Below, piece after piece: positions 16,217-56,612 of a stretch of DNA of 64,000 nt. A program made the translations under genes and the position numbers. The notes beneath the pieces were generated by a model that was given only the letters and a program-made list of their open reading frames with translations, had not been told where the DNA came from and did not search any database. The stretch spans positions 1 to 64,000 of IMG/VR virus record IMGVR_UViG_3300031857_000005; one strand, 5' to 3'. Within the stretch, counting starts at the first letter, position 1. The number at the start of each line of letters is the position of its first letter.

Positions 16217-16543
16217 TTAGAATCTTTTATTATGATAAAATTTGTATAACTGTTTAATCGTGTCCTCAAGCATATCAGAAACTTCTGTCACAAAGTCTAT
16301 TTCCTCTTGTTCTGGTAAATCCTCCCACCCAAGTTCATAATTATTCCACATAATTGATTCTACCGCTCTTAAAGTTAAGTCATATTTAAAACCTCTATAA
16401 CTTTCAGTTTCGTAATACACTTGTTGTGCATTAATTGAAAGTAACTTCTTAACCTCATCTAAATCAATTCTTCTACGGAAGAACTTTGTTTCATTCAATA
16501 ATTCTTCCCTCAATATTCTTCTTATGTTTTCTTGTAGGTTCAT
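16217..16543 (-). CDS. leader-family protein (MNLQE..RRILREE type)
   Basis: MNLQENIRRILREE followed by an RRR-type module. Confidence 0.8.
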   Translation of the reverse strand: MNLQENIRRILREELLNETKFFRRRIDLDEVKKLLSINAQQVYYETESYRGFKYDLTLRAVESIMWNNYELGWEDLPEQEEIDFVTEVSDMLEDTIKQLYKFYHNKRF

Positions 16544-16545
16544 AT

Positions 16546-16995
16546 TTAATATTTTATTATTTCATAATTTTCTAAATCCAAGTTTTTCAAGGTAATCTCT
16601 TTTTCATAATTAAAAGTTAAATTTTGAATTATTGTTTGATCTAAATTAATATTTGATTTGTGTGTTTTTATTCTGATTATTTTAGCGTTATCATTTATTT
16701 TAACATCGGATAAAAACAACCAATCCGTATCGTAAAATAAATATTCATCAGAGGTTCTTATCCAATGTATATTTTTATCCTTTTTAAATTCCCCAATAAT
16801 ATTAACTAATCTACTCAATTCAATATATTCAGGTATATTCATCAAACCACCATCATTAAAATCTTTATTAAACAGATTATCCCAATTGTCATCAAACCCT
16901 TCCATGTTACCATGAAAATTAATATATTCTTTTTTATATTTATCTTTTATGGTTTCTTCCCTTAATATTCTTCTTATGGATTCTTGTAGGTTCAT
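16546..16995 (-). CDS. leader-family protein (MNLQE..RRILREE type)
   Basis: start re-assigned to MNLQESIRRILREE; minus-strand TATTTAT at 17002-17008. Confidence 0.8.
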   Translation of the reverse strand: MNLQESIRRILREETIKDKYKKEYINFHGNMEGFDDNWDNLFNKDFNDGGLMNIPEYIELSRLVNIIGEFKKDKNIHWIRTSDEYLFYDTDWLFLSDVKINDNAKIIRIKTHKSNINLDQTIIQNLTFNYEKEITLKNLDLENYEIIKY

Positions 16996-36409: not shown

Positions 36410-36829
36410 GTGAGAAATATTATTAGACAGATATTAAAAGAAGAAACCAAAATAGCTGACAGAATTAAAAAAATGATTCAGAGGTTATTTCCTGATACAT
36501 TAGTTTATACTGATTTTTTTTACGATAATTATGATGACGAGGATGTTGAGTATAATATAAGAATAACTTATAGATTGTCAGAAAAAACAAGAATTAGTGA
36601 GGATGAATATGGTGGTGTTAAACCATATGAAGGAGTTATAGTTTTTGATATTCTAAAAATTGAGTCAACAACATATGATAGTCGTGATGAATATAAAACT
36701 TTCTATTATGACGATGACTTACCTGAAGTGGTTTGGGATGTGTTCCAAGAATCCTTATATGAAAAGATTGAACCAATTACACCATTCTTATATTCCTATA
36801 TAAGTTTTGATATTAATACAAGAACATAG
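36410..36829 (+). CDS. leader-family protein (IRQILKEE type)
   Basis: GTG start, MRNIIRQILKEE; TATTTAT at 36399-36405. Confidence 0.75.
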   Translation: MRNIIRQILKEETKIADRIKKMIQRLFPDTLVYTDFFYDNYDDEDVEYNIRITYRLSEKTRISEDEYGGVKPYEGVIVFDILKIESTTYDSRDEYKTFYYDDDLPEVVWDVFQESLYEKIEPITPFLYSYISFDINTRT

Positions 36830-37823
36830 ATTGAAATGTGTTAAACGACATTGGTTGTTTAACATTTGGATTATATTTAAATGATACATTCATATCAACA
36901 ACAGGTCTTCTACCTAATGGAATTGAAAGTCCCCTACTAACCTGATACTCCAAAGATTCTTTAATATCGTCCTCACCAACATTTGGCATTTCACCTTTAA
37001 AGAATTCACCATCACCTTTAACAACTTTTCTTTCTTCCATCTTTTGAACATTTGTTACTAGTACATCAACAATCGCTCTATTCTCAATAACATCAAATGA
37101 TGTAATCTTAAATGTGACTTTTATTTTACTGTCACCCCATCCTGAAGTTATAAATAAGTTTTTGTTTTCAACCTCTGAACTTGTTAATGATGATTTAAAA
37201 TGCTCTTCTTTCTTTGATATTAATTCATCTAAAGTAATTCTACCCTCAATAATTTTATTCATTTCTTCTCTTGATACTGAAATCATTTCCTCACCAATTT
37301 CTCTATTATATCTGGTAGGACGAGAATGACTCATATGTTTGGAAGTTGATGAAGAATAATTATAATCTACGGCAAACCATTTACCAAATTTGAATGCGTA
37401 TATTGGATACCAACCATATGATGAAACAACATAAACCCATTCATTATCACGACTATTCTTCCAATTACCCTCCAAGTTAGAACCTTTAAATGGTATTTTG
37501 TCGGCAACATAAGTTGAGGATAATGTATTACTTGTTCTTTTTTGATTTAAGAACCTTTTTGGATCCTTGTAATTAGATTGAGTTACATTCTCATAATCAC
37601 CATCAGGACGATAGTTTAATGTGTAGATATTATAATATTTACGAGCTTCATTCCTTGGAATATTAAATGTGGATAATGAGTTCTCAAAGAAGTCTAACAT
37701 CTTTTTTTCAGTTCCCAAATCTCTTTTAAATTTATTAACAAATTTAAAAAGACGAATCTCCATCGGATTGAAGATACTTTTTTCAGTTTCTTCCTTTATA
37801 ATGTATTTAATTAAATCTTTCAT
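36813..37823 (-). CDS. leader-family protein (MKDLIKYIIKEE)
   Basis: minus-strand TATTTAT at 37830-37836; YVVSSYGWYPIY...YSSSTSKH module. Confidence 0.8.
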   Translation of the reverse strand: MKDLIKYIIKEETEKSIFNPMEIRLFKFVNKFKRDLGTEKKMLDFFENSLSTFNIPRNEARKYYNIYTLNYRPDGDYENVTQSNYKDPKRFLNQKRTSNTLSSTYVADKIPFKGSNLEGNWKNSRDNEWVYVVSSYGWYPIYAFKFGKWFAVDYNYSSSTSKHMSHSRPTRYNREIGEEMISVSREEMNKIIEGRITLDELISKKEEHFKSSLTSSEVENKNLFITSGWGDSKIKVTFKITSFDVIENRAIVDVLVTNVQKMEERKVVKGDGEFFKGEMPNVGEDDIKESLEYQVSRGLSIPLGRRPVVDMNVSFKYNPNVKQPMSFNTFQSMFLY

Positions 37824-42374: not shown

Positions 42375-43985
42375 ATGAAAGATCTAATCCGACAAATATT
42401 AAGAGAAGATATAAGTACAAGTTTACCAATTAAACTTAGTGGTAGTTATAGAGTTCCAAAAAATATACCATCACGAGGAGATGCATTACACGCATTCAAC
42501 AGAAGAAAATCTGATGGGTTTGGTGGATATATGTTAACAGGTGGACCAATACCAAGTCAATGGAGCGGTTATGTTACACTAAATCAAGGGAAAGGTATTA
42601 ATCAAGTTTTAAGAGAGTTAATTGACAAAGGCGTTAAACCTGATGTTACAGATATTACTATTAATATTAATGATTATACTGTTAATTGGAGTGCAACTAT
42701 TGATGAGAGTAGTGATGGTAAATCATATTATGGTGTAGGATCAAGAGGTTCTGCTGGCGGAAATGCCGATTCAAGAGCGTTAGGACAGATATCAAAATTA
42801 AAATCTAAAAATCCTGAGTATTGTAATTGGAAAGAAGTGTTGGATTTAAATGTAACAACACCGTTTAAGATTAGACAATTCTTTTTAAAATACACTAAAT
42901 GTAAAGAAGGTGAAGAAAATGATGTTGATAAACTTTATGATAAATTAAAAACTAAAGGAGGTAAGAATTTAGAAAATAAAGTTAAAGATTGGATTAAAGA
43001 TACTGGAATTGAAAGTAAATTCAAATCATTCAAAGACATTATCAACTCAAATGAGTACAAGGATTTGTTAAAGTTTCTTGAAGTTAAGGAATCAATACAA
43101 CTAAAGGAAGAATCTAACATACAATCAAGATTAATTTCTGTAATGAAAAATGCAGGATTTAAAACCGCCGCAGATTCCGTTGGGGGAATTGAGAACCTAT
43201 TCAGAATACTTGGTAGGGATAAAGAAATTACTATGAAATATCTTCTTAGTCATTTTAATGATTTAAAACTTGAAAAGTTCGGAAATGGATTTTATTTGTC
43301 TCAGGGTTATAATGCATTTTTAGAAAAGGATTCACCATTTTGGGGTGGAAATATAAAAGTATTTGATGATTACTTTTCCCATTTCTTGCATGACATACCT
43401 TATGAATTATACCTTGAATATAGAAAAGATTTACTGAGAGAAATAATAAGTAGATATCCTGAATTAAATGATGGGAGTCAAGTAATCGTATATAAAGACA
43501 GAGGATTATATCAAATATTAGACAGGTTTTATGTAAATGATGAGGTAATTACCGAAAGCACTTCAAGAAAAGATAGAACCATTTCAATGATAGATGACAT
43601 CGGTATTTTGGATACAATACAATTAGTAGGAGGTATTGATAATCTAAAACGAATTTTAGGTAATGATTATTTTAATAAACATAAAAAAATTGAAGTAATT
43701 AGTGAAATTGCAGGTCATTTTGGAGGTAGAGGTGAAATACATTTTAGTGATTTTGATATTGATGTTAGTTTAGGTAAGGATGTTTATAGTGATGGAAGTT
43801 ATCAAGAGACATTTGTACATTATGTTGATGATAATGAATATTTTTACCATAAAACATGGATGTTTGATGAAGATGGATGGATGTTGGATGAACCAATTGA
43901 TGAAGGATATATGAATTTATATAGTTTGGTGGATTATCAAATTGATGAAATATTTAATGTATTAATTGATAAATTTTTAATTTAA
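42375..43985 (+). CDS. multi-module leader-family polyprotein-like ORF
   Basis: MKDLIRQILRED; two internal VGG..NL..ILG modules each preceded by LKEES or ITES. Confidence 0.8.
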   Translation: MKDLIRQILREDISTSLPIKLSGSYRVPKNIPSRGDALHAFNRRKSDGFGGYMLTGGPIPSQWSGYVTLNQGKGINQVLRELIDKGVKPDVTDITININDYTVNWSATIDESSDGKSYYGVGSRGSAGGNADSRALGQISKLKSKNPEYCNWKEVLDLNVTTPFKIRQFFLKYTKCKEGEENDVDKLYDKLKTKGGKNLENKVKDWIKDTGIESKFKSFKDIINSNEYKDLLKFLEVKESIQLKEESNIQSRLISVMKNAGFKTAADSVGGIENLFRILGRDKEITMKYLLSHFNDLKLEKFGNGFYLSQGYNAFLEKDSPFWGGNIKVFDDYFSHFLHDIPYELYLEYRKDLLREIISRYPELNDGSQVIVYKDRGLYQILDRFYVNDEVITESTSRKDRTISMIDDIGILDTIQLVGGIDNLKRILGNDYFNKHKKIEVISEIAGHFGGRGEIHFSDFDIDVSLGKDVYSDGSYQETFVHYVDDNEYFYHKTWMFDEDGWMLDEPIDEGYMNLYSLVDYQIDEIFNVLIDKFLI

Positions 43986-43992
43986 TGAATGA

Positions 43993-45363
43993 ATGATTAC
44001 AAAATTGTTAAAAGAAGAATTATTTAGAATACAAGACTTAATGAATATTAAGAGAACTATTCTTAATGAGGAAAAAGCCGCAACCTCTACAGTTGAGGGA
44101 AAATGTTTAAATCTTAAAGATTATTCAAAATCGTTTAGTGCCGCTCAGGCAGCAACTGATTTAAGAGCACAAGAATTTATAAATGGTATTTTAGAGTATG
44201 TTAAGACAACTACACCTGATTTATATAGTAAATGGCAATCAGGAACATTTTTAAGTATTAGTAAAGTAACATTAATTGGATGTGCATCAAATAGGGTGAC
44301 AAGTGATAGAGAAAAAAAATATGTTCAGTATTCATCTACTGGTGGTAGAGCAGTGTTACCTACTATGGATAATAATTATGTGGTAAAAACATATAATAAA
44401 GCTTCTTATAATACTGTGTTATCAGGTTCGGGAATAAGTGATTTAAATTATCCAGAATACCAAGTATTTTTTGATGATAATCTTAAATATGCGTCAGACA
44501 GAGTAAATAACTTATGGAAAACAATGAAAAACCTCTTAACAAAAAACAGAATTGTGTTTATAGACACACCAACAATAGAAGCTCATATAGTTAATACGGG
44601 TGGAAGGTTAGATGAAAATAGAGACACCGCAAGTTACCCTAATCCAGGACAAATAGTCTTATTCAAAGGTACAATCTGTGAATATAAAGGAGAAAGAAGT
44701 CCTGATTTATCTTGTATTAAAGGGTTAACGGTTGAGTTTAACTATGATGAAGTTGTTGAAGCAACGGAAGGTGCCGCACATTGTTGTAATAAAGGTAGAT
44801 TTAACTTAACACTAAATGGTGAACCAATAGTTAGAGATGATGGTAAATTATACGCAAGTGTTAACAACGCGAGTGCAGAACAAGAAGAAACAGGATATGG
44901 AAATGAATTTTACAGAACCACGAAAGACTCCAAAGGAAAGGATGTTTTAAATAAAAATGTTTTTGGAAAACTTGGTACTATGGATATACAAGTTTTACCT
45001 GATAAAGAACAGTTGACAAGTGTTAGATGGAATAGTACACACAAATGTTGTGAAACTACTAAAAACCAAGGAAATATGAAAAATAAAGATCGAAAAACCG
45101 CTTGTTTTCCTGCGGGAAATTATAGATATAATGTCTTTACAATTGATGATGAAAAGGCTAAGGCAATATATGATAAGGCAGTTGCAAATAATGATAAATT
45201 TTTGACTTTAAAAAGTAGTACTGATCATCCTGAAGCTCATAAAGAATCCGTAAGAGTTTTAGTAAAAAATGCAAACGGGGAAACCGTTTATGATGTTATT
45301 GGTAGTCCATATGGACCGTTTCAAATACCATTCTGTGCTAAACCAACCAATATAGTAGCGTAA
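43993..45363 (+). CDS. leader-like Cys-rich protein, possible OmpA-C-like segment
   Basis: MITKLLKEELFRIQDLM...ILNEE; VTLIGCASN...YASDRVNNL; several CC pairs. Confidence 0.55.
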   Translation: MITKLLKEELFRIQDLMNIKRTILNEEKAATSTVEGKCLNLKDYSKSFSAAQAATDLRAQEFINGILEYVKTTTPDLYSKWQSGTFLSISKVTLIGCASNRVTSDREKKYVQYSSTGGRAVLPTMDNNYVVKTYNKASYNTVLSGSGISDLNYPEYQVFFDDNLKYASDRVNNLWKTMKNLLTKNRIVFIDTPTIEAHIVNTGGRLDENRDTASYPNPGQIVLFKGTICEYKGERSPDLSCIKGLTVEFNYDEVVEATEGAAHCCNKGRFNLTLNGEPIVRDDGKLYASVNNASAEQEETGYGNEFYRTTKDSKGKDVLNKNVFGKLGTMDIQVLPDKEQLTSVRWNSTHKCCETTKNQGNMKNKDRKTACFPAGNYRYNVFTIDDEKAKAIYDKAVANNDKFLTLKSSTDHPEAHKESVRVLVKNANGETVYDVIGSPYGPFQIPFCAKPTNIVA

Positions 45364-45375
45364 TATTTTTATTAA

Positions 45376-45723
45376 ATGAAAGATTTGATTAAACATATAT
45401 TAAAAGAAGAAACAGAACCAAATGATATTGATAAAAAACTTCTTAATTTTTTATTGAGAAGAGTTAGAATTGAGGAAAAAGATTTGGGAACCGATTGGCT
45501 TGATAATAGACCCTTAAGAGTTACAGAATATAGATTTGAGGGATTACCTGGTTATGGATTTAATAGTTTTAATAATAAACCAACAATGGAATATAAAATT
45601 ATTGAAATGTTATATGAAAATGACATAACCGAATATGTTTATAACATGAATGAAAGAAATCCTGAAAGAATAAAAATAATCAAAACCATAAGACATTTTT
45701 TAAATAATCTATTAACAAAATAA
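45376..45723 (+). CDS. leader-family protein
   Basis: MKDLIKHILKEE. Confidence 0.75.
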   Translation: MKDLIKHILKEETEPNDIDKKLLNFLLRRVRIEEKDLGTDWLDNRPLRVTEYRFEGLPGYGFNSFNNKPTMEYKIIEMLYENDITEYVYNMNERNPERIKIIKTIRHFLNNLLTK

Positions 45724-46130
45724 TGAACTTACAAGAAAATATACATAGGATTAAATCAATGATGGGTTTATACGAACAAACATCTGAGATTAAAGTTAAG
45801 GCATCTATTGAGGGACTCATTAATTTCTTTGATCCTGCAAATAAAAAAGTTTACAGGTACCAACTTCAAGCCAAAGTGGATGAAAAAACTTCAGTTAATA
45901 TATTTGTTAAATCAATTGATGATATAACTGGTAGTTTAACTTATATTAATCCTGAAGATGATACTGAAGAAACACAACAAATACCTGTAGATGAATTAAA
46001 TAAAATTAAACTTGATTCACCAAAAAAAATGGATATTAATAATATCTTATCATTTAGAAAATATCTAAAGACAATAGAGATTAATTTAATATTTGTTGAG
46101 GAAAAACAGTTACAAATTGTTAGTCATTAA
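45723..46130 (+). CDS. leader-family protein (RIKSMMGL type)
   Basis: MNLQENIHRIKSMMGLYE. Confidence 0.75.
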   Translation: MNLQENIHRIKSMMGLYEQTSEIKVKASIEGLINFFDPANKKVYRYQLQAKVDEKTSVNIFVKSIDDITGSLTYINPEDDTEETQQIPVDELNKIKLDSPKKMDINNILSFRKYLKTIEINLIFVEEKQLQIVSH

Positions 46131-46420
46131 TCAACACCTCTTTTTTATTAAAATTACTTTTTGTATTATTAATATATGTCAGTGGTATATGTTAAAATAT
46201 TAAATTACGAGAATGGTGTTACCTACACCAAACAAAAAGTATGTACAATACTTGATGAGGATCAGTATGGTAATGTTACCGTTAAAATTTATAACGATGA
46301 TATTAAAGATTACGAATTAAGAGTGTTAATGAAAGGACAATATTCAAGTCACCCATACTTAATGGAGTTTGATTAAAAATTAATATACTCATAATTAAGA
46401 TTCTTCATATTTATAGTAAT

Positions 46421-47200
46421 ATGAAAGAACACATAAGACATATCTTAAGAGAAGAAACCTCAAGACAAACCAAACTCATTCATATGATAACTAATTTGGG
46501 GTTAACCAATACCGCAAAAGCCGTTGGTGGATACAATAGATTAGTTAAAGCATTAGAAGGTACCCATTTTTTTTTAACTCAAATTGATATAACACCAATA
46601 GATATTCGTTATTATTTGTCTGGTAGTAGAGGACAAGGTAAAGGTAATCTTTTTTATAGAATTATTATGGACCCTTATGATTTTTGGGATAGTTGGGAAG
46701 ATTATGACACATACCAATTAATGGAAGAATTAAATGAGGAAAATCTTAAAAATGTAAGAAAAATATTATCTGAAGAGGAAGGTGAGGATTTATCGGATAT
46801 ACCTTTAAATGAATTACTTTGGTATGATCAATCTGATCGTATTGGTAACGCTTTGAGAAATTCGGCAAATATTGTTGATGGAGATGCTTATGGTGATCAC
46901 TTATATAAACAGATGAGTGATGCTCTTGAAAAATACGGAGGAAAAGTATTGGAGTTCAATAACGAAAACATATCCTTCACCGTAGATATGGAAACCTATA
47001 TCTCAGAATTAAATGATGAAACAATTGATTATATTATAGAAAGATGTGGACTTGATTTCTCTTGTTTATTTGATGAGTTAAAGAGTGATGGTTGGATAGA
47101 TAAACCAAAACCGAGATTCAATGAGGATTGGTACAATAATAACTTTGATACCAAGTACTTCAACGAGGTATTTTCAGACAATATAGGCGAATATTTATAA
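46421..47200 (+). CDS. leader-family protein with VGG module
   Basis: MKEHIRHILREE; AKAVGGYNRLVKAL; TATTTAT at 46408-46414. Confidence 0.8.
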   Translation: MKEHIRHILREETSRQTKLIHMITNLGLTNTAKAVGGYNRLVKALEGTHFFLTQIDITPIDIRYYLSGSRGQGKGNLFYRIIMDPYDFWDSWEDYDTYQLMEELNEENLKNVRKILSEEEGEDLSDIPLNELLWYDQSDRIGNALRNSANIVDGDAYGDHLYKQMSDALEKYGGKVLEFNNENISFTVDMETYISELNDETIDYIIERCGLDFSCLFDELKSDGWIDKPKPRFNEDWYNNNFDTKYFNEVFSDNIGEYL

Positions 47201-47204
47201 TAAT

Positions 47205-48242
47205 ATGAAAAAACTCATAAGACATACACTAAAAGAAGAAACAGGAATACAAAATAGATTAAATCAATTAATCAAACAAAGTGGTATTATAAATGCATCA
47301 AATGCGGTTGGTGGTTTTACTAATTTAGTGAAGATATTGGGGTTAGAAATGAGTGATTTAAAAACCCAAGAGATGTTAGTTAAAAACTTTATTTATTATG
47401 TAGATATAGAAGATATTGATATATCACATTTAGAAATTAATAAAGATAGATCAGATAAAGTAAGAATTAAAATACATTTTGAGACAAATAATCCTGCCAG
47501 TAATATGGAATCTTGGCTTGTAAGGACTTTATGTGATGAAATGAATAAGTTTTTTCCATTTAAAACAGCAGCATCCTGGGAACCTGCATTTGCTGGCAGA
47601 GGTGTAACGGTAATATTAAATTCTGAAAGAATAGAGGAAACTGATGAAATAAATGAATCATCATATATCCGTCCTGAAATTAGACGAAGAGTACGAAATT
47701 TAGATAGATTGGTTAATGCAATTCTACCTAATCTTTATACTTGTGACTATCCCAATGGAGAGACATTTATTCAAGGAGTTGTGGATGAGATACGATGGTT
47801 ATCTTTTGAGGATGATTATGGTTTACAGGATTTAAAATTTGAAGAACTTTCAGATTTCGTTTTTAATTATATGGGTGATGAATTGATTGAGTATTATGAA
47901 GACAGATGTAGTGGTATGATGGAAAGTAGAAAGATTATTAAAAAAGTATTAATGGAGGAAGAAATTAAAAAATTACCATCATTCTTTACAAGAAGAATCG
48001 ATCATCACAAGTTTGAGAAGATGATGAGAAAAGGAATACCATATATATTTCACGATTCAAACTCATTAGAAGAGTTTAAATATAAATTGGTTGAGGCAAC
48101 ATTAGAAAACTATATACACTATAAGTATGAAATAAATATTGATGAACTACCACAGGAAGATAAAGACACATTCATAAAATATATGATAGAAGTATATGAT
48201 CCAGTATTAACGGCATATTATAGAAACTTTTATAAAAGATGA
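47205..48242 (+). CDS. multi-module leader-family protein
   Basis: MKKLIRHTLKEE; VGG module; INE-SSYIRPEIRRRV module; internal IIKKVLMEE leader remnant. Confidence 0.8.
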   Translation: MKKLIRHTLKEETGIQNRLNQLIKQSGIINASNAVGGFTNLVKILGLEMSDLKTQEMLVKNFIYYVDIEDIDISHLEINKDRSDKVRIKIHFETNNPASNMESWLVRTLCDEMNKFFPFKTAASWEPAFAGRGVTVILNSERIEETDEINESSYIRPEIRRRVRNLDRLVNAILPNLYTCDYPNGETFIQGVVDEIRWLSFEDDYGLQDLKFEELSDFVFNYMGDELIEYYEDRCSGMMESRKIIKKVLMEEEIKKLPSFFTRRIDHHKFEKMMRKGIPYIFHDSNSLEEFKYKLVEATLENYIHYKYEINIDELPQEDKDTFIKYMIEVYDPVLTAYYRNFYKR

Positions 48243-48568
48243 AAGAACTAATCAGATATATATTAAAAGAAGAAGTTAATCATAAAAAACTAAATATGAT
48301 TAAGAAATATGTTGAGAAATATATTGATAGTAACAAAAATCTTAAAGGTAATGTGTGTGAGGTATCGGCTCAAAGTGATAGAGGAACAATTGTTGTTGAT
48401 ATTTATATAGATGATGATCATTATATATCGTTAGATTATGAATATAACTTGTATTTTTTACAAAAAAATATTGAAAGTAAAATAATGGAAGCATTTGGGA
48501 TTAAAAATAGATATGACATTATTGTGTACACAGAAAAATGTTCATCAGATAGACTTACATATGATTAA
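48239..48568 (+). CDS. leader-family protein
   Basis: MKELIRYILKEE. Confidence 0.75.
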   Translation: MKELIRYILKEEVNHKKLNMIKKYVEKYIDSNKNLKGNVCEVSAQSDRGTIVVDIYIDDDHYISLDYEYNLYFLQKNIESKIMEAFGIKNRYDIIVYTEKCSSDRLTYD

Positions 48569-48610
48569 AAGTAAAAGAGTTAATTAGATATTTATTAATA
48601 AATTTGTAAA

Positions 48611-49135
48611 ATGAAAAAAATTATAAGATTAACAGAATCAGATTTAACAAGAATTGTTAATCGTGTGATTAATGAAAATCAAGAAGAAGTTGATCGCATA
48701 TTAGATAAAATAAGTGATGGTGGATATGGGTCTTTAAGTATTGATGAAAAAAGATACTTGAACGCATTTTCTAAACACGAAGGACGACCTGATGATTTTG
48801 TTGACCCATCAGAACAATATGATGAAAGTGAAAAAGAAGGTGAAAAATTCACATCATCATTTAAACATATACCCACAATAGAATTTGTTGTTACTTCAAT
48901 AGAAAAAAAGACAAAGAACTTATATATTTTATATGGTACTATACAATTTAACAATAAAGAATATATAGGTGGTTTGTATTTGAATAAACTTGGTAAACTT
49001 ATTGATTTTGATTTTTATGAAGAACCAAAAAGTATTCATGACGATGTTAGTATATTCAAAGATGATATTGAAGGTATTGAACACGAGGTTACGATGTTTT
49101 TTAAAGATGAGGTTATACCATCTTTAATAAATTAA
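48611..49135 (+). CDS. leader-family protein (LTESDL type)
   Basis: MKKIIRLTESDLTRIVNRVINE; VDRILDKIS..G..SLS..EK.YL module. Confidence 0.8.
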   Translation: MKKIIRLTESDLTRIVNRVINENQEEVDRILDKISDGGYGSLSIDEKRYLNAFSKHEGRPDDFVDPSEQYDESEKEGEKFTSSFKHIPTIEFVVTSIEKKTKNLYILYGTIQFNNKEYIGGLYLNKLGKLIDFDFYEEPKSIHDDVSIFKDDIEGIEHEVTMFFKDEVIPSLIN

Positions 49136-49146
49136 AATCTATTTAC

Positions 49147-49178
49147 AAACCCACACTTTAACAGGTTGTGGGTTTTTT
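49147..49178 (+). terminator. intrinsic terminator
   Basis: AAACCCACA...TGTGGGTTT followed by a T run. Confidence 0.75.
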
Positions 49179-49681
49179 GTTTGCACCATATCTTTGTAGA
49201 AACGATAAGAGATATGAAAACCAGAGAAGAAATTAAAAAAGACATTTCAATTATTATTATTAACATGCACGATCAAAAACACAATAGTGATGATATTTTA
49301 AGACGATTGGGTGCGATTGAAGGTATGTTAATAATATTAGGTAAAACCAAAATGCACGAACCATTACCGTTTAAAGAAACGGAAGTAACTATTACTGGGT
49401 TTTGGGGTAAAACCACTACAGGTGTTGAAACAGAGTCGTACAAAGATTGTATTTTAAGATTGGCTAAAGAAGTTATTAATGAATAATAAACAATAAGAGA
49501 TATGGAAAAACATACACAAATAGTAAAGATGGATAAATCAATCCTTGAATATTTTAGAATGGTTATGGATTTTGATAACCAAAGTAAGAAATACAGAGAA
49601 GTTACCGAAAAAGAGTTTATCAATGAATTAACCAAGTCATTGAATTGTTGTGTAGGAAACAAAGAAATTGTTTGGGTGTAA

Positions 49682-49713
49682 TTTGTTTAATTAAAAATAG
49701 TTTTCTATCTTTG
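49682..49713 (+). promoter_or_regulatory. Bacteroidota-type promoter
   Basis: TTTG-N20-TATCTTTG, GTG start at 49719. Confidence 0.75.
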
Positions 49714-50175
49714 TTTTTGTGAGAGATTTAACAAAATATATTGAGTCCATTTTTAAAACCAGTAACCATTACACCCTTATAATGGAAACTCCATATGTTA
49801 TTACATATGAAAACGGAGTTAATGTAATTACATTTCATGTTGATTATAAGAATGATGATTTTATTTTTGAAATCTGTAATTCAGTATACCGTGTTGGGTT
49901 AAAAATAGTTTGTGACGGATTATTAAAACACCTCCCAAAAGGTTCATATATTTATAAATTAAACGAAATTAACATACCAATATCAAATATTGTCAAAGAA
50001 TATTTCATAATATGAGAAAGTGTAAAGATTGTGAAAGTGATGAGGTGTTTGTGGAGTGTAATTATCCCAATTTAGATTATCCATTATATCAATGTTTCGG
50101 TTGTTATTGTGAAGAATATGATTATTATGTTTTTGGTGGAGATGATGAAGAATAAATAAGTGTATATTTATTTGT

Positions 50176-50934
50176 ATGAATCTAAAAGAATCAATAAAAA
50201 AAGTATTAAGGGAAGAGAGGAATCATAGTAAATTAATAGTTAAATTATTAAATAGACTGATAGTTTCAAAATACGAAGATGTATGTAAGATTGAAGTTGT
50301 TCATCCTTCTGTTGATTCTGATTACGATTTTTATAGAGTGTTTGTTTATTTTAATCAGCATGGAAAAAATGGGTCTAAATATTGGGAAGAGAATATACTG
50401 AATGAAGTTTGGGAATATGTTCACGATACATTTGGGATTTCACCAGCTCTTCATTCAGTTCGTGTACCATCTTGTAATGATAATAAACTTAATGAAAATA
50501 GTGTGGATACAAGATTTAACAGAATAAAATCAATGGTTGATGAATTTGGCGTATTTAATACCATCAAAGCGTTAGGTAGTTATACCAAGTTTAAAAAAAT
50601 ATATGGTGACAATCTAACAAAAGATGAGAAAGTTATTTTAATAAGGGAACTTGTAAAAGAATATGGTGAAGACGGAGATTATATTGATGTTATGCCATAT
50701 GACATTTTTGTTGAAATTGATTATAATCAAACTGATTCATACGATTACACCACTGAAGTCATATATGTAAACAAGGGTGGTTACTTTAATTTTAGACAAT
50801 ATAGTTATGATGATGAACTTGATGATTATGATTGGGAAGATTATCATAATGGGAGTGAATATTTGTTTGTATTATCTGAATCAGAGTTAGAAAATATTAT
50901 TCGTGTTATATTTGAGAGGGTAATTCATAAATAG
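50176..50934 (+). CDS. two-module leader-family protein
   Basis: MNLKESIKKVLREE; internal LNE then FG...TIKALGS module; TATTTAT at 50165-50171. Confidence 0.8.
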   Translation: MNLKESIKKVLREERNHSKLIVKLLNRLIVSKYEDVCKIEVVHPSVDSDYDFYRVFVYFNQHGKNGSKYWEENILNEVWEYVHDTFGISPALHSVRVPSCNDNKLNENSVDTRFNRIKSMVDEFGVFNTIKALGSYTKFKKIYGDNLTKDEKVILIRELVKEYGEDGDYIDVMPYDIFVEIDYNQTDSYDYTTEVIYVNKGGYFNFRQYSYDDELDDYDWEDYHNGSEYLFVLSESELENIIRVIFERVIHK

Positions 50935-51926: not shown

Positions 51927-52001
51927 ATTCTTTTAAGAATATTAAAAGAATGTAATATGTTCTTTATTAGAAAATAATAATTAAAGAAAAGATTTAAGAA
52001 T

Positions 52002-52028
52002 GGGGATATAATAAATGTCCCCTTTTTT
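52002..52028 (+). terminator. intrinsic terminator
   Basis: GGGGATAT-AATAA-ATGTCCCC followed by a T run. Confidence 0.7.
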
Positions 52029-52048
52029 ATTTTGTGGTATTTATATAT

Positions 52049-52780
52049 ATGAATTTACAAGAACAAATATCAAGGATCCAATCAATGATGGGACTGAATG
52101 AAATATCAAACCCATACTCAATTACTTGGTTAGAACCAACAAAAGAATATTTTACTCAAGAGTTAGACGAATTACTTGGAAATGATATGAGGTTCAGCAA
52201 AGATGAGTTCTTCCATCCACAAAATTATGATTTAATGTATTCATTATTTCCACATACATTTAAACTTATTGCGGAACACGCAAAAGGAAGTGAAGTGGAT
52301 GATGAACAAGAAATTAAAGACATTCTATTAGATAAAGAAATATCTGATTTAATGAATGATTGGGACGATTTCAGAAAGGTTCTATTAAATGATAGACAAT
52401 CACAAAGGGAGGGGTTTAATCTGTTTAATAAAGGAAGAATGAAAGAGTGGGATGATAATAAAATCAACAACACATTTTATATGGGAAAGTTCTCAAAAGA
52501 GTTTCCAGGAATGTTTAAAGATACAACATCGTCAGGTTTAATTAAACAAATGAAAAGTGATGATGGTGAAGTTAATCCACACCACAAAGGATATTTTGAT
52601 AATATAGAAAACTTAAGAAACGAAAGACACAGAGAACTTCCATCTCCATTTGTTATGAAATTACCGTCAGGTGGGAGAGAAGGAAATGAATATACATTAA
52701 TTGGTGGACACAAACGCTCAACAATTGCTAATCAACTAAATGTACCAATATCTGTTTGGTTTATAGATTTATCGGAATGA
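52049..52780 (+). CDS. leader-family protein with ParB/Srx-like C-terminus
   Basis: MNLQEQISRIQSMMGLNE; PFVMK...LIGGHKR; TATTTAT at 52038-52044. Confidence 0.65.
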   Translation: MNLQEQISRIQSMMGLNEISNPYSITWLEPTKEYFTQELDELLGNDMRFSKDEFFHPQNYDLMYSLFPHTFKLIAEHAKGSEVDDEQEIKDILLDKEISDLMNDWDDFRKVLLNDRQSQREGFNLFNKGRMKEWDDNKINNTFYMGKFSKEFPGMFKDTTSSGLIKQMKSDDGEVNPHHKGYFDNIENLRNERHRELPSPFVMKLPSGGREGNEYTLIGGHKRSTIANQLNVPISVWFIDLSE

Positions 52781-53511
52781 ATTCACAAGAAAACATATTA
52801 ATATTAAAAAGTATCGCCAAAAAGATATCAGATAAACTTCATTGTGATAGACACGGATCCTGTGTACATTTTGCGGAAATATTTGTTGAGGAAGTTAATG
52901 ATAAACATCCTGAATTATTAAATGATTTTGATGTTATTGAGGGATATGTTAATGTAAAGTTTGGGAATGGAATACCTCAAGAACATACTTGGATTAGATT
53001 AAATAATGGTGAAATTATTGATCCAACATTTTCACAGTTTGACAAATACGATAAAAACGCACAGTACAGTAAAAAAAGAACTAAAGTTTATTCAGGACAA
53101 GAATATTATGATGAGGGTAAAGAAGGATCGTGGTTCTCCGAAAGAAGAAAAAACCTCCCAAGTTCAGTATTCAAGGAAGGAAAAAGAGAGTCTATAAGAA
53201 AGGTATTAAGGGAAGAAACCAAATTACCATTAATCATTAGGAGAAGGATTAACACCTTGGAGGATTTGTTATACAATCATATGGCAACATCATATGCTCC
53301 ACACAAAGTTTGTAGATATAAAAACGAAGATGACTTACTTATGTATGTTATTGCATCGGTAATAGAAGATATGTATTATAGATACTTTGATGAAGAGATT
53401 AGTGATTTATCAAAAGAGTGGGAAGATATGTATAGATTAATGGAAAAATACATTACGGATGAATTTGGGGATAAAATAAAAAATTATTACCACATCCACT
53501 GTGGAGATTAA
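52777..53511 (+). CDS. transglutaminase/papain-like (Cys-His-Asp) domain fused to leader-plus-RRR module
   Basis: GSCVHFA...EHTWI...IIDPT; internal ESIRKVLREE-TKLPLIIRRRI. Confidence 0.6.
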   Translation: MNSQENILILKSIAKKISDKLHCDRHGSCVHFAEIFVEEVNDKHPELLNDFDVIEGYVNVKFGNGIPQEHTWIRLNNGEIIDPTFSQFDKYDKNAQYSKKRTKVYSGQEYYDEGKEGSWFSERRKNLPSSVFKEGKRESIRKVLREETKLPLIIRRRINTLEDLLYNHMATSYAPHKVCRYKNEDDLLMYVIASVIEDMYYRYFDEEISDLSKEWEDMYRLMEKYITDEFGDKIKNYYHIHCGD

Positions 53512-53522
53512 TGAGTAATACT

Positions 53523-54218
53523 ATGAACCTACAAGAACATATAAGAAGAGTATTAAGGGAAGAAAAAAGATTCTCACCATTTATCAGTAGAAGATTACCA
53601 GAGGATGAGATAAATACATACTTCAATGAAGTTAAGAATCGTTTAATGGGAATGATAACAAGTGATAAGTCATCTATGATGGAAAAAGATGAATTTAAAC
53701 AATTTATCATTACATACACAATTAATTTCATAATGGAAAACTATTATGATACATTTCCTGAAATGACGGACTTCTATGAAAAATTATTTGATGATTTATA
53801 TGAATATTATAATAATGAAATGGATGAATCTTATGAGAGTATAAATAATATGAACCTACAAGAGAACATAAGAAAAGTATTGAGGGAAGAAAATAATATA
53901 CCGTCATATATTAGAAGAAGACTCGGTATTTTACAGGAGTATATGGATGATTTGGATCCAAACGATATTTGTAAATACTGGGATTATGATGAGGTTGATG
54001 GATTCACAAATGAGGTATTATCAGAGATAGTTAGAATTATAGTTAATAGTATTCCTGAAATACATTCAGAAGATTGGTTTAATGCTTATGATGAAGTACT
54101 TGGTGTGTTAACCGATTTAAATTACCACTTGGAAATTAACGACTTTTTTATTCACACACTTGATAATTGTGATAATTATGTAAATGAATCAATAGATAGA
54201 AATGAAAGAATTAATTAG
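53523..54218 (+). CDS. fusion of two leader-plus-cargo units
   Basis: MNLQEHIRRVLREE at 53523 and MNLQENIRKVLREE in frame at 53850. Confidence 0.8.
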   Translation: MNLQEHIRRVLREEKRFSPFISRRLPEDEINTYFNEVKNRLMGMITSDKSSMMEKDEFKQFIITYTINFIMENYYDTFPEMTDFYEKLFDDLYEYYNNEMDESYESINNMNLQENIRKVLREENNIPSYIRRRLGILQEYMDDLDPNDICKYWDYDEVDGFTNEVLSEIVRIIVNSIPEIHSEDWFNAYDEVLGVLTDLNYHLEINDFFIHTLDNCDNYVNESIDRNERIN

Positions 54219-54636
54219 ACATATAATAAAAGAAGAAACATCAAGAAAAACTAAACTATTAAAAATGGTTGATAGTATTGGGGTTCTAAACACGGCAGAT
54301 GTTGTTGGTGGGGTGGAAAAATTATTTGATATATTAGGAAACGAGTTCTTCACCGACTCCAATAAGATTGATATTATTAAAGAAATTATAGAATCAAATA
54401 ATGGGGAATATATCTCATTGAGTGAACTAGGTGAAGAACCAATATTGGTAGATGATGACGGTGTAGAGTTTTCACAAATAGAAATATTATATTCAACAGA
54501 TGTAATGTTATATCATTATGAAAAAGAAACAGGAAAAGATCATGGAGAATCATTTATGGATTATGTACAATTACGAAGTTATATAATAGATGATATCTTT
54601 AATATGTTGGTTGACTATTATATAAATAACAATTAA
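54202..54636 (+). CDS. leader-family protein with VGG module
   Basis: MKELIRHIIKEE; TADVVGGVEKLFDILG. Confidence 0.8.
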   Translation: MKELIRHIIKEETSRKTKLLKMVDSIGVLNTADVVGGVEKLFDILGNEFFTDSNKIDIIKEIIESNNGEYISLSELGEEPILVDDDGVEFSQIEILYSTDVMLYHYEKETGKDHGESFMDYVQLRSYIIDDIFNMLVDYYINNN

Positions 54637-54641
54637 GTGGA

Positions 54642-55073
54642 ATGAAAGAATTAATCAGACATATAATAAAAGAAGAAACCAACCGAAAGACAAGGATGGT
54701 AAAAATCATTAATAATATGGGAATTGATAAAACCATAGAGATGATAGGGGGATTTGATAAGTTTGAGAAAATAATGGATATAAATGATCCGATGGATTAC
54801 CTACATCTATTTAACGGAATGGATGAAGTCGAATCAAAACAATACGAAAAATCTTTTATATATCGTTTTAACCCAAAACGCAATATAATGATGGTTAACC
54901 CTAATATAGAAAGAGTATATATCAATCAATATGAAATATGGAATGTTCTAAGGCGTGAATTTGATTTAAATAATAATGAAGCTCTTGATGCCGTAAATGA
55001 ATGGTTAAAAGATGAATATGGTGTAGAAGATTTTATGTTATTAGTTTCAAGCGCTTTAGATACAATTAAATAA
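54642..55073 (+). CDS. leader-family protein with IGG module
   Basis: MKELIRHIIKEE; TIEMIGGFDKF. Confidence 0.8.
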   Translation: MKELIRHIIKEETNRKTRMVKIINNMGIDKTIEMIGGFDKFEKIMDINDPMDYLHLFNGMDEVESKQYEKSFIYRFNPKRNIMMVNPNIERVYINQYEIWNVLRREFDLNNNEALDAVNEWLKDEYGVEDFMLLVSSALDTIK

Positions 55074-55531
55074 TGAAAGAATTAATTAGACATATATTAA
55101 GGGAAGATCAAAACAGAGAAGAAAGACTCAGGTTAAAAATTATCTCCATTATTAGAGATGCAGGACTTTCCCAAGCAATAAGTGTGATAGGAGGGGTTAA
55201 TAATTTGATTAGAATATTGGGGGTAGAAAACTCAATGAAATTTCTCAATTTGTTTAATGATATGGATGAGATAATTTTTGTTGATGAATACAATGATGAC
55301 GATGAGTATACATTATTTAGATTCAGGGAAGGATTAAATTATTTTGTCCTAAGAAATGATACAGGAACATTATTCATCTCCAAAGATATTATGGATGTAT
55401 TAAAGACTATGGAAAATGATGATTATTTCTATATTTATCTATGGATTAAAAGATGGGTTAAAAATCAATACGGAATAGAACCAAGAAATATCTTAACAAC
55501 TGCTGGCGGAGATTTAGAAACGATGGGATAA
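55073..55531 (+). CDS. leader-family protein with IGG module
   Basis: MKELIRHILRED; AISVIGGVNNLIRILG. Confidence 0.8.
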   Translation: MKELIRHILREDQNREERLRLKIISIIRDAGLSQAISVIGGVNNLIRILGVENSMKFLNLFNDMDEIIFVDEYNDDDEYTLFRFREGLNYFVLRNDTGTLFISKDIMDVLKTMENDDYFYIYLWIKRWVKNQYGIEPRNILTTAGGDLETMG

Positions 55532-55532
55532 C

Positions 55533-55880
55533 ATGAAAGAATTAATTAGACATATAATAAAGGAGGAAACAAAGTTACCGGCATTAATCAGAAGAAGGGT
55601 ATCTGAAGATGAGTTAGAACGAGAGTTTAAAGAATCGTTAAAAGATGCATTGGCAATGATTAAGAGAGGAAAAGACGATAGTTTACAATCCTTTACATAC
55701 CAACGAATGTTAGAACATCTAATATGGGTAACAATTAGTATGTTAATTGATTCGATCCATTATGAATTATTCTCAACAATCCCTGAAAATATAAATTGGT
55801 ATGATGAAGTATTCAAAATGTTAGAGAAACATTACAGAAGTAGAATTGTTGATGAATACATGAAACATTTTAGATTATAA
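55533..55880 (+). CDS. leader-family protein with RRR module
   Basis: MKELIRHIIKEE-TKLPALIRRRV. Confidence 0.8.
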   Translation: MKELIRHIIKEETKLPALIRRRVSEDELEREFKESLKDALAMIKRGKDDSLQSFTYQRMLEHLIWVTISMLIDSIHYELFSTIPENINWYDEVFKMLEKHYRSRIVDEYMKHFRL

Positions 55881-55888
55881 TTAAGTAT

Positions 55889-56302
55889 ATGAATATACAA
55901 GAAAACATAAGAAGAATATTAAGGGAAATGAGTGATGACTTATATGTTATACAGGATGAAGATAATCTTTTTTTACAAAGTCTTCCTCGTTCTATTAAAA
56001 GAAGAATAACCCATAAAGATTTAAAATGGTTTGATAATAGAATTGATGATTATATTCGTACAGTAACACACAAAGTCGGTTATAATTTATTTAAATCAAT
56101 GGTTCTTGAGGGTATTATCAATGAATTTGTAACTGTATTTAAACTTAATGAATTTTCAGATGAACAAAATGAATGGGGGTTTTTTGAGTATGAATCAGAA
56201 GAATCAAAAAAGGCATTTGATTTGTTTTCTAAATTAAAACCATTTCTTGATGATAAATATGGAAAAAGAATACGACAAGGATGGGAACAAAAAATGAGAT
56301 AG
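55889..56302 (+). CDS. leader-family protein
   Basis: MNIQENIRRILRE; LPRSIKRRI. Confidence 0.8.
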   Translation: MNIQENIRRILREMSDDLYVIQDEDNLFLQSLPRSIKRRITHKDLKWFDNRIDDYIRTVTHKVGYNLFKSMVLEGIINEFVTVFKLNEFSDEQNEWGFFEYESEESKKAFDLFSKLKPFLDDKYGKRIRQGWEQKMR

Positions 56303-56549
56303 AATTAAAGGATTTATTATAATAAAAGAGTATAGACTCAAATCATTCATTCCATCTTACCGTTCGTAAACTCACTACAGATTCCATTCATAATTTTATC
56401 CTATACTCTTTGTTTACAGTAAACAGGTTAGTGTAAACAACTATAACCAAATAAGGATACAACCTTATAATCCATCATTATAAGTCTCCTACCTTATAAT
56501 GTAAAATACTATTAACATTATGTAGGGTATTTGTAAAAAGTATTTCCCC

Positions 56550-56612
56550 CATTTAAATCACTCCACTTCGTTCCGTTCTCCCTCATTTAAATCACTACAC
56601 TTCGTTCCGTTC
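56550..56612. repeat. 29-bp direct repeat x2 in the long non-coding region
   Basis: CATTTAAATCACT(C/A)CACTTCGTTCCGTTC at 56550-56578 and 56584-56612. Confidence 0.9.

What the first reader, a model, noticed from the sequence alone, without database searches (positions are those of the whole stretch)
53523..56302. Tandem cassette array delimited by 36-42 nt DNA direct repeats
Seen: ATGAAAGAATTAAT(T/C)AGACATATA(A/T)TAA.. recurs at 54202, 54642, 55073 and 55533 (spacing 440, 431, 460 nt), and ATGAA(C/T)(C/A)TACAAGA..A(C/T)ATAAGAA.A.TATT.AGGGAA at 53523, 53850 and 55889, with inverted copies at 16543 and 16995. Nucleotide identity extends to third codon positions while cargos diverge; genes are butted by 0-10 nt. 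Inference: the leader DNA doubles as a recombination site allowing expansion, contraction and swapping of cargo cassettes, like an integrase-free integron.
Basis: partly seen in the sequence, partly recalled or inferred. Interest (0 to 1): 0.62.

Follow-up and report, generated by a model that had tools for sequence, protein, structure and literature searches.

The report
Shared gene leaders shuffle phage cassettes
A 304-kb T4-like jumbo phage has a row of small genes that all begin with the same ~42-base leader; related phages have gained, lost and swapped these genes by recombining within that leader, which probably also encodes a capsid-packaging tag like the one on phage T4's injected internal proteins.

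Summary
The repeats are the first 39-42 nt of tandem genes at 53523-56302. They encode MKELIRHI(I/L)(K/R)EE (leader A) or MN(L/I)QExIR(R/K)(I/V)LREE (leader B).

The window is the first 64 kb of a 304,365-bp T4-like phage with a gp21-type prohead protease, a gp23 capsid protein and a UvsX-like recombinase.

- **Codon conservation.** Leader synonymous sites match far more often than codon usage predicts (0.82-0.87 against 0.55). The gene bodies are saturated (0.51-0.60).
- **Spread.** The conserved block is exactly nt +1 to +41. It recurs more than 130 times in about 48 related lake-metagenome phage contigs.
- **Variation in relatives.** One cassette is absent in one relative, 2.2 kb is extra in another, and a cargo is replaced. 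Orthologues carry different leader types, and some cassettes are fused in frame.
- **Junctions.** Junctions lie in the leaders, including a chimeric leader. Homology breakpoints are 8.3-fold enriched at leader-gene starts, against 1.5-fold at other gene starts.

There is no integrase and no hairpin site.

T4 shows the same thing: ipII and ipIII share a 47-nt identical block that covers their capsid-targeting sequence. Indirect evidence suggests this leader is likewise a propeptide cut after an invariant Glu. That part is inferred, not shown.

The parts
52002..52029 (+). Terminator-like hairpin plus T-run just upstream of the array. No further + strand terminator was found before 56302, so the array is probably one transcription unit.
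52049..52780 (+). First gene after the terminator (243 aa). It has the leader C variant MNLQEQISRIQSMMGL.
52777..53511 (+). 244-aa gene with a leader-B-like start (MNSQENI...). It has an internal leader copy (KRESIRKVLREE, about 53185-53225) followed by a B-type body domain, so it is an in-frame fusion.
   Evidence: (family D1)
53523..53849 (+). Cassette 1. Leader B at 53523-53564; body of the IRRR/helical family. It runs in frame into cassette 2 with no stop.
53850..54218 (+). Cassette 2. Leader B at 53850-53891. It overlaps the next gene by 17 nt.
54202..54636 (+). Cassette 3. Leader A at 54202-54243; alpha/beta body of the GG family.
54642..55073 (+). Cassette 4. Leader A. The AF2 model has pLDDT 92 overall and 61 in the leader. 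Its orthologue in L020 carries leader B.
55073..55531 (+). Cassette 5. Leader A. The cassette is absent from the closest relative L020, where it is bounded by the leaders at 55073 and 55533.
55533..55880 (+). Cassette 6. Leader A on an IRRR-family body. Orthologues in L010 and L017 carry leader B. AF2 gives a three-helix bundle, with the leader at pLDDT 45.
55889..56302 (+). Cassette 7. Leader B. L020 has an unrelated 88-aa cargo here, and similarity ends about 30 nt into the leader.
16217..16995 (-). Two further leader B cassettes (16217-16543 and 16546-16995) on the minus strand. Orthologues of the first carry leader A in L010 and L017.
42375..50934 (+). Dispersed members of the same leader family: 42375 (536 aa), 45376, 46421, 47205 and 48239 with leader A, and 50176 with leader B. 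Several have C-terminal domains homologous to the array bodies.
36813..37823 (-). 336-aa gene with a leader A start (MKDLIKYIIKEE).

Best explanation
The repeats are the 5' coding leaders of a multigene family in the accessory region of a T4-like jumbo phage.

SHOWN:
1. The roughly 42-nt leader is conserved at the nucleotide level, including synonymous sites and rare codons, while the rest of each gene is saturated.
2. The same leader heads more than 130 genes in about 48 related phage contigs.
3. Related phages differ by gain, loss, replacement and fusion of cassettes and by exchange of leader types between orthologues. The junctions lie in or directly behind the leaders.
4. Breakpoints are strongly enriched at leaders.

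INFERRED MECHANISM (DNA): the phage's own UvsX/gp32-type homologous recombination uses these short identical stretches. Unequal crossovers and gene conversion occur within a genome, and exchange occurs between co-infecting relatives. Because the crossover is in frame at the start of a gene, every product stays translatable and keeps its leader.

INFERRED MECHANISM (protein): the leader peptide is an N-terminal propeptide or capsid-targeting tag that the gp21-type prohead protease removes after the invariant Glu of the I/L-x-E site. T4's internal proteins work this way. On this reading the array is an exchangeable set of proteins packed in the head and injected. What the cargos do is unknown.
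For: GENOME TYPE. Peptidase_S77 lies at 135.9 kb, Gp23 at 138.5-140.1 kb, with portal and TerL nearby, and UvsX-like and gp32-like genes at 232-234 kb.

DNA LEVEL.
- Codon test and rare-codon fixation in copies that were not selected by the DNA pattern.
- The information profile bounds the conserved block at nt +1 to +41, with zero information on either side.
- The leader B pattern occurs in 58 IMG/VR stretches, up to 7 per stretch.
- Logan contigs break and pile up 10-100 fold at the leaders.

EVENTS.
- L020 equals the window's left flank, one leader, then the right cargo, so it lacks cassette 55073-55532.
- L017 has 2.2 kb more than L010. The L010 leader is chimeric: its first 30 nt match the left L017 leader and the rest matches the right one.
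- L010 and L017 are about 100% identical up to 80 nt into a gene, then 58-70%.
- Three orthologue pairs have swapped leader types A and B.
- Of 232 internal homology ends, 29% fall in the 3.5% of sequence at leader-gene starts (8.3-fold). Other gene starts show 1.5-fold.

PRECEDENT. T4 ipIII and ipII share a 47-nt identical block (RBS plus 10-codon capsid-targeting sequence) and then diverge.

PEPTIDE LEVEL.
- Leaders A and B share the motif (Q/K)E.IR.IL(R/K)EE but use different fixed codons.
- The same body domains occur with four leader types or with none.
- The leader is the low-confidence, unpacked part of both AF2 models.
- The 7-residue motif occurs 24 times in the proteome, 21 of them within the first 45 residues.
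- Four of the 7 hits outside the leader-gene arrays lie in the head-gene cluster (binomial 2e-4).
- In five related genomes, three structural-cluster proteins have a variable leader-like extension that ends in an invariant Glu with L/I/V at P3, followed by a conserved mature part. T4 gp24 looks the same (MAKINELLRE|STTT).
- The putative P1 residue is Glu in 165 of 166 leaders and never Asp, whereas the next residue is Asp in 16 (p = 2e-5). In T4, Asp at that position blocks processing (PMC9026906).
- The capsid protein keeps a T4-like site: SFLINE|A here against SFLTE|A in T4.
Against: - No virion proteomics or expression data exist, so packaging and cleavage are unproven.
- The complex prediction of protease with a cassette protein gave no verdict.
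- The cargos are mostly acidic (pI 4-6), unlike the basic T4 internal proteins.
- About 30 of 366 genes carry a leader, including 250-536-aa proteins. They sit among small + strand genes that look like an early region.
- The scaffold-protein motif is internal (residue 38), not N-terminal, once relatives are compared.
- Leader B copies in different phages are almost as alike as copies within one phage (6.33 against 5.59 differences in 42 nt). Gene conversion within a genome cannot explain that alone. It needs either very frequent exchange between phages or direct selection on the nucleotides.
- The breakpoint statistics use related, non-independent loci that were fetched because they contain leaders. 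Alignments can also run on into a neighbouring leader.
Confidence: 0.6

Rival explanations
1. The leader is conserved because the nucleotide sequence itself is functional, for example as a translational operator, an initiation region, or a recognition site for a dedicated protein. On this view the peptide is partly a by-product, and recombination at leaders is a side effect of the identity.
For: The synonymous codons are the same in about 48 contigs, and copies between genomes are nearly as alike as copies within one genome. Codon 6 varies in amino acid (S, N, H, T) but keeps a third-position C. The block starts exactly at the ATG. Upstream Shine-Dalgarno sequences are mostly missing.
Against: Leaders A and B share the peptide motif with different fixed codons. 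Structural-cluster proteins carry the peptide motif with unrelated DNA. There is no predicted structure and no Rfam match. The Glu-not-Asp rule is a protein-level signature. This rival may be an extra layer rather than an alternative.
Confidence: 0.2
2. The leader peptide has some other role: an oligomerisation or docking helix, a degradation or localisation tag, or part of the fold. The proteins then act in the infected cell and are never packaged.
For: The cargos are acidic, the family is large, and it lies in an early-like region. The N-terminal part of the alpha/beta model weakly resembles small helix-turn-helix DNA-binding domains (Z 4-5). There is no direct evidence of packaging.
Against: The leader can be dispensed with or exchanged on the same domain. 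It is not packed in the models. It is shared with head-cluster proteins as an extension ending in an invariant Glu. The context is T4-like, with a protease of that specificity.
Confidence: 0.3
3. This is an ordinary tandem paralogue family. The N-terminus is simply the best-conserved part, and the nucleotide identity reflects strong codon bias in a 30% G+C genome or recent duplication. Recombination has no special role.
For: The bodies are real paralogues. Codon bias is strong: AAA 83%, GAA 77%, AGA 73%.
Against: Leader codon identity exceeds the codon-usage expectation, while the bodies sit exactly on it. Rare codons are fixed. Orthologues carry different leader types. Leaders can be chimeric. 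Breakpoints are enriched relative to other gene starts.
Confidence: 0.05
4. This is a true site-specific cassette system, integron-like, in which an unrecognised recombinase or nuclease acts on the leader.
For: The repeat is sharply bounded and codon-frozen across many phages. T4-like phages are rich in homing endonucleases.
Against: No tyrosine recombinase is present. The leader forms no hairpin. Crossovers fall at different places: nt 30-33 in one event, within the first 25 nt in another, and about nt 80 in a third. The phage encodes a UvsX-type system, and T4's system is reported to need patches of under 50 bp (PMC2839356).
Confidence: 0.05

Closest known systems
T-even phage internal proteins (T4 ipI, ipII, ipIII) with their capsid-targeting sequence (CTS)
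   Same: Both occur in a T4-type phage with a gp21-type protease. Both are adjacent small genes whose first 10-13 codons are nucleotide-identical while the rest diverges; in T4, ipIII and ipII share 47 identical nt. Both leaders end in I/L-x-Glu. The gene sets vary between related phages (PMC9026906, PMC12373910). T4 cargos are injected anti-restriction proteins.
   Different: The leader sequences are unrelated (T4 uses MKTYQEFIAE). In T4 the identical block also covers the ribosome-binding site, whereas here it starts at the ATG. Here there are about 30 genes per genome, at least 4-5 leader types, in-frame fusions and large proteins, and the cargos are acidic. The same DNA leader is also shared by about 48 divergent phage contigs. 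Packaging is unproven here.
PeSL (promoter-early stem-loop) mediated modular shuffling in T4-type phages (Arbiol et al. 2010, PMC2839356; PMC4122927)
   Same: Short repeated motifs flank small accessory ORFs in hyperplastic regions. Recombination between them deletes, inserts or replaces ORFs and leaves a single chimeric motif. The process probably relies on the phage's general recombination system.
   Different: PeSLs are intergenic promoter-terminator cassettes. Here the repeat is coding and in frame. The genes abut or overlap, and no promoter or terminator lies between cassettes. Mini-circles have not been tested.
Integrons
   Same: Both are arrays of small, promoterless, same-strand cassettes delimited by a recurring site. 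Cassette content varies between relatives.
   Different: There is no IntI-type integrase, no attC-like hairpin and no attI/Pc platform. The repeat lies at the 5' coding end, not in the 3' non-coding end. The exchange looks homologous rather than site-specific.
Prohead-protease propeptides of T4 head proteins (gp24, gp23, gp22, gp67, gp68, Alt)
   Same: Both are N-terminal extensions ending in L/I-x-Glu directly before the conserved mature protein. T4 gp24 reads MAKINELLRE|S. The post-capsid-gene protein here reads MLNDIIKKILRE|ATS.
   Different: Homology between the mature parts could not be shown (BLASTP E = 0.10, N-terminal segment only). Cleavage was not observed.

Membership tests
T4-type internal proteins with a capsid-targeting sequence | Encoded by a T4-type phage with a gp21-family (Peptidase_S77) prohead protease and a scaffolding core | tested here: met
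   PF03420 scores 79.6 bits at 135933-136358 and phrog_207 gives 3e-42. The Gp23 capsid protein, portal and TerL lie alongside.
T4-type internal proteins with a capsid-targeting sequence | N-terminal propeptide of 10-19 residues ending in a (L/I)-x-Glu processing site (PMC9026906) | tested here: met
   Leader A ends in I(I/L)(K/R)E at residue 11, and leader B in (I/V)LRE at residue 13. Glu is present in 165 of 166 copies and Asp in none. This is met at the sequence level only.
T4-type internal proteins with a capsid-targeting sequence | Sequence similarity to the T4 CTS (MKTYQEFIAE) | tested here: not met
   The leaders differ from the T4 CTS, which was read from NC_000866.
T4-type internal proteins with a capsid-targeting sequence | The protein is packaged into the head, its propeptide is removed, and it is injected with the DNA | not testable with these tools
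   The phage is uncultured and no proteome exists. The complex prediction gave no verdict.
T4-type internal proteins with a capsid-targeting sequence | Small basic proteins | tested here: not met
   Most leader proteins have pI 4-6. Sizes range from 87 to 536 aa.
PeSL regulatory cassettes | An intergenic sigma-70-like promoter plus a stem-loop terminator flanks each ORF | tested here: not met
   Genes abut or overlap. The only + strand terminator near the array is at 52002-52029, and promoter-like hits do not exceed the shuffle expectation.
PeSL regulatory cassettes | Insertions, deletions and replacements between close relatives are bounded by the repeat, leaving a chimeric copy | tested here: met
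   enrichment.
Integron | An adjacent IntI tyrosine recombinase | tested here: not met
   PF00589 finds nothing in the 304-kb genome, while it is found in all 14 control genomes.
Integron | attC sites: imperfect palindromes that fold as single-stranded hairpins at the 3' end of each cassette | tested here: not met
   The leaders fold with 0 kcal/mol as single-stranded DNA, no better than shuffles. The repeat is the 5' coding end.

The most novel reading that the evidence does not exclude
The 42-nt leader is a pool-wide, codon-frozen 'address label plus recombination handle'. It is one coding module, shared by dozens of divergent freshwater jumbo phages, that does two jobs. It targets any downstream protein into the capsid, and it lets whole genes be exchanged in frame between phage species.

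In the stronger version, a dedicated factor recognises its nucleotide sequence, which would make this a coding-sequence cassette-exchange system rather than a by-product of general recombination.
Probability: 0.15. Interest if true: 0.8.

Novelty: new variant of a known kind. Interest (0 to 1): 0.6.

Why it matters
If the leader is a capsid-targeting propeptide, it becomes a simple sequence tag for finding the injected proteins of uncultured jumbo phages. In T4 these are anti-restriction proteins. That would matter for a set of genes that currently has no Pfam, PHROG, PDB or Atlas match.

The finding also shows how a large phage keeps such a set of genes variable. In-frame recombination at a short coding leader swaps whole genes without breaking expression. 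This extends the PeSL and T-even internal-protein models to a much larger scale and across phage species.

In practical terms, such a leader could be used to load foreign proteins into related phage heads, as the T4 CTS is.

Tried and rejected
- **Family scans.** Pfam and PHROGs scans of all cassette proteins gave nothing above threshold.
- **GenBank phages.** tblastn and megablast against GenBank phages found no match.
- **ESM Atlas.** The feature search gave no usable hit.
- **Fold searches.** Foldseek against the PDB gave nothing for either AF2 model. VIA-wide gave only weak helix-turn-helix-like matches to the N-terminal helices (Z of 5 or less). BFVD returned only uncharacterised proteins of uncultured phages.
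- **Complex prediction.** The job pairing the prohead protease with the 55533 protein gave no verdict, with a score of 0.00. It counts neither for nor against binding.
- **Identical contig.** IMG/VR contig L023 is 100% identical to the window over 20 kb, so it gives no information on variation.
- **Read joints.** Joints from read laying at the leaders were short-sided and ambiguous between leader copies. They were not used as evidence of recombinants; only the pile-up and the contig breaks at leaders were used.
- **Late promoter motif.** TATAAATA is only mildly enriched upstream of genes (21, against 6-18 for permuted controls) and sits oddly close to the ATG, so it was not used.
- **Scaffold N-terminus.** The idea that the scaffold protein's N-terminus equals a leader was withdrawn. 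Relatives show that the motif lies at residue 38, after a conserved 33 residues.
- **gp24 homology.** Homology between the 432-aa post-capsid-gene protein and T4 gp24 was not supported beyond the N-terminal segment.
- **Other blanks.** UvsY (PF11056) gave no signal anywhere, including the controls. Rfam found nothing in 51500-58000.
- **Not run or not available.** No other genetic code was needed. Repoila et al. 1994 (PMC395341) could not be read.
Full report
**1. What is there**

The window is the first 64 kb of a 304,365-bp IMG/VR virus record with about 30% G+C. The genome encodes:
- a gp21-family prohead protease (PF03420, 79.6 bits; phrog_207, 3e-42);
- a Gp23-family major capsid protein, a portal and a large terminase in one cluster at 128-145 kb;
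- a UvsX-like recombinase next to a gp32-like single-strand binding protein.

It is therefore a distant T4-type jumbo myovirus. The nearest capsid proteins in GenBank are about 41-43% identical. They belong to an uncultured 484-kb phage, a Microcystis phage and Flavobacterium phages.

**2. The observation**

Each copy is the start of an ORF.
- Leader A encodes MKELIRHI(I/L)(K/R)E(E/D).
- Leader B encodes MN(L/I)QExIR(R/K)(I/V)LREE.

Further copies head genes at 36813(-), 42375, 45376, 46421, 47205, 48239 and 50176. Related N-terminal types C (MNLQEQISRIQSMMG), D (MKIIITE.Q) and E (MKKVIRLTESDLTRIVKRVINE) head other genes. In all, about 30 of 366 genes carry a leader, nearly all of them between 14 and 72 kb.

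Two cassettes (53523 and 53850) are joined in frame. The gene at 52777 carries an internal leader copy ahead of a cassette-type domain.

**3. Is the nucleotide identity more than codon bias?**

Yes. At aligned identical amino acids, leader pairs use the same codon in 0.82-0.87 of cases, against 0.55 expected from the genome's codon usage. The gene bodies give 0.51-0.60 against 0.53-0.56, which means they are saturated.

Leader B fixes rare codons: AAC, CTA (7% of Leu), ATA and AGG (10% of Arg). The same codons dominate in 37 copies from other phages that did not match the DNA pattern used to fetch them. Across 137 leader B copies the information content is high from nt +1 to +41 and zero on both sides, and the high information includes third positions.

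**4. The cargos**

With the leader removed, the bodies still find each other. They fall into a few paralogous domain families:
- a roughly 90-residue helical domain with an invariant RR (alignment A1);
- an alpha/beta domain (alignment A2).

The same domains occur behind leaders A, B, C or D, or with no leader at all. They also occur doubled, or at the C-terminus of large proteins.

AF2 models are confident for the bodies (mean pLDDT 81 and 92). The leader is the low-confidence, unpacked helix (45 and 61). No fold or family match gives a function.

**5. Relatives and junctions**

Homologues exist only in metagenomes. The leader B DNA pattern occurs in 58 stretches of about 50 IMG/VR contigs, many of them 100-320 kb, with up to seven copies per stretch. 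Leader A occurs in 12 stretches.

In four lake metagenomes, Logan contigs end at the leaders, and depth rises 10-100 fold in the leader bins.

Individual events:
- **(a) One-cassette difference.** The closest relative, L020 (about 89% nt), lacks cassette 55073-55532. Its single leader is preceded by the window's left flank and followed by the window's right cargo.
- **(b) Replaced cargo.** After the 55533 orthologue, L020 has a different 88-aa cargo. Similarity stops about 30 nt into the leader.
- **(c) 2.2-kb difference.** L017 has 2.2 kb (three and a half cassettes) that L010 lacks. The L010 leader is chimeric: its first 30 nt equal the left L017 leader, and the rest equals the right one.
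- **(d) Breakpoint just behind a leader.** L010 and L017 are about 100% identical until 80 nt into a gene, just past the leader and the IRRR box. Identity then drops to 58-70%.
- **(e) Leader swaps.** Three orthologue pairs carry different leader types.
- **(f) Fusion.** A stand-alone cassette in L010 is the in-frame C-terminal part of a 317-aa ORF in L017.

Systematically, 232 internal ends of high-identity alignments between loci were examined. Of these, 29% fall within -10 to +80 of leader-gene starts, which make up 3.5% of the sequence (8.3-fold). Other gene starts show 1.5-fold. Per gene the rates are 0.233 and 0.042 (Fisher p about 1e-15). The loci are related to one another and were fetched through their leaders, so the p-value overstates independence. 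The contrast with other gene starts is the relevant control.

**6. Mechanism at the DNA level**

The system is not site-specific:
- No tyrosine recombinase is present.
- The leader does not form a hairpin.
- Crossover positions differ between events.

The phage has a T4-type recombination system. For T4, patches of under 50 bp are reported to suffice (PMC2839356). The picture is that of PeSL-mediated modular shuffling (PMC2839356, PMC4122927), but with a coding, in-frame repeat.

One point is unresolved. Leader B copies in different contigs are almost as alike as copies within one contig (6.33 against 5.59 differences; 1 of 500 permutations reached the observed gap). Homogenisation within a genome is therefore real but small. 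The shared codons need either very frequent exchange between phages, for which mosaics like (d) give evidence, or direct selection on the nucleotides.

**7. What the leader peptide does (inference)**

I read T4 directly from its genome record. ipIII and ipII are adjacent and share a 47-nt identical block that comprises the ribosome-binding site and the 10-codon capsid-targeting sequence. After that block they diverge. This is the same phenomenon in the type phage.

In T4 the CTS directs internal proteins into the prohead core. gp21 removes it at an I-x-E site, and Asp at the last position blocks processing (PMC9026906). The cargos are injected anti-restriction proteins, and their set varies between T-even phages (PMC3012670, PMC12373910).

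The following points bear on the leader studied here:
- **(i)** Leaders A and B share a peptide motif but use different fixed codons, so the peptide is under selection.
- **(ii)** The 7-residue motif is almost exclusively N-terminal in the proteome: 21 of 24 occurrences, and two of the other three are the fusion-internal leaders.
- **(iii)** Four of the seven hits outside the leader-gene arrays lie in the head-gene cluster (binomial 2e-4).
- **(iv)** In five related jumbo genomes, all of which have the protease, three structural-cluster proteins carry a variable, leader-like N-terminal extension. It ends in an invariant Glu with L/I/V at P3 and is followed by a conserved mature sequence. One version reads MNIQDIVNKIILE|ATT, close to leader B, and another switches between A/B-like and E-like types. 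T4 gp24 has the same layout.
- **(v)** The putative P1 residue is Glu in 165 of 166 leaders and never Asp, while the next residue is Asp in 16 (p = 2e-5).
- **(vi)** The capsid protein keeps the T4-like maturation site.

The points against are listed in the Against line. The main ones are acidic cargos, the size and location of the family, and the absence of any direct packaging data. I put this part at about 0.55 and the recombination part at about 0.85.

**8. Verdict**

The closest known systems are the T-even internal-protein/CTS loci and PeSL shuffling. It is not an integron. It is best filed as a new variant of a known kind. What is new is the scale, the number of leader types, the in-frame fusions, and a codon-frozen leader shared across many uncultured jumbo phages.

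Noticed in passing
window 56303-57178: An 876-nt non-coding stretch follows the array. It holds a 34-nt tandem repeat (56545-56612) and a 45-nt inverted repeat (56313-56423). The G+C-richer part at 56960-57180 folds far better than shuffles as RNA (-63.5 kcal/mol, z = -3.5, 0 of 200). Metagenome depth spikes at 56968-57151. It has no Rfam match and no other copy in the genome, and it is 83% conserved in L020. It may be an undescribed structured RNA or a regulatory region.
   Followed up: partly
window 59979-60620; genome 64610-68780 and 72090-72572: A second tandem family starts with MK(I/Y/F)IITE.Q (leader D). Its bodies are homologous to the leader A/B cassette domains.
   Followed up: partly
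window 13969, 51663, 63380; genome 69387, 110153, 111063, 119872: A 22-residue N-terminal type (MKKVIRLTESDLTRIVKRVINE, leader E) heads seven or more otherwise different genes. It contains both an L-T-E site and the I-(K/R)-(K/R)-V-I-x-E motif.
   Followed up: no
genome 128996-130345, 141671-142969, 143912-144379(-) (outside the window): Proteins of the head and structural cluster have leader-like N-terminal extensions that end in an invariant Glu. The extension type differs between related genomes.
   Followed up: yes
window 52777-53511: The N-terminal 140 residues, with conserved Cys and His, give a weak below-threshold match to YunG (PF24585, E = 0.028). They are fused through an internal leader to a cassette-type domain. 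If the leader is a cleavage site, this would be a small polyprotein.
   Followed up: no
L010:10837-11556 and L011:4747-5583 (relatives): A Tae4-family amidase and a PG_binding_1 protein sit inside the variable array of relatives. They start with related N-termini (MKLIENHIRKIVK..., MNLNEEINRIQRMMG...). Cell-wall enzymes carrying the tag would fit proteins that are delivered by the virion.
   Followed up: no
T4 NC_000866 65416-66415: T4 ipIII and ipII share a perfectly identical 47-nt block (RBS plus CTS) and then diverge at once. This is a clean textbook example of the same codon-frozen leader.
   Followed up: yes
whole genome: TATAAATA, the T4 late-promoter motif, lies 7-16 nt upstream of 21 gene starts, including the portal gene and cassettes at 42375 and 54642. 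Enrichment over permuted motifs is weak.
   Followed up: partly
window 650-1855 and genome 301746-302945: A glutamine-synthetase-like gene lies at 650-1855 (Pfam Gln-synt_C and Gln-synt_N). A second ORF near the other end of the record was not scanned for families, so its identity is unconfirmed. The window also holds an RNA ligase, a DHH-family protein and a Band 7 protein.
   Followed up: no
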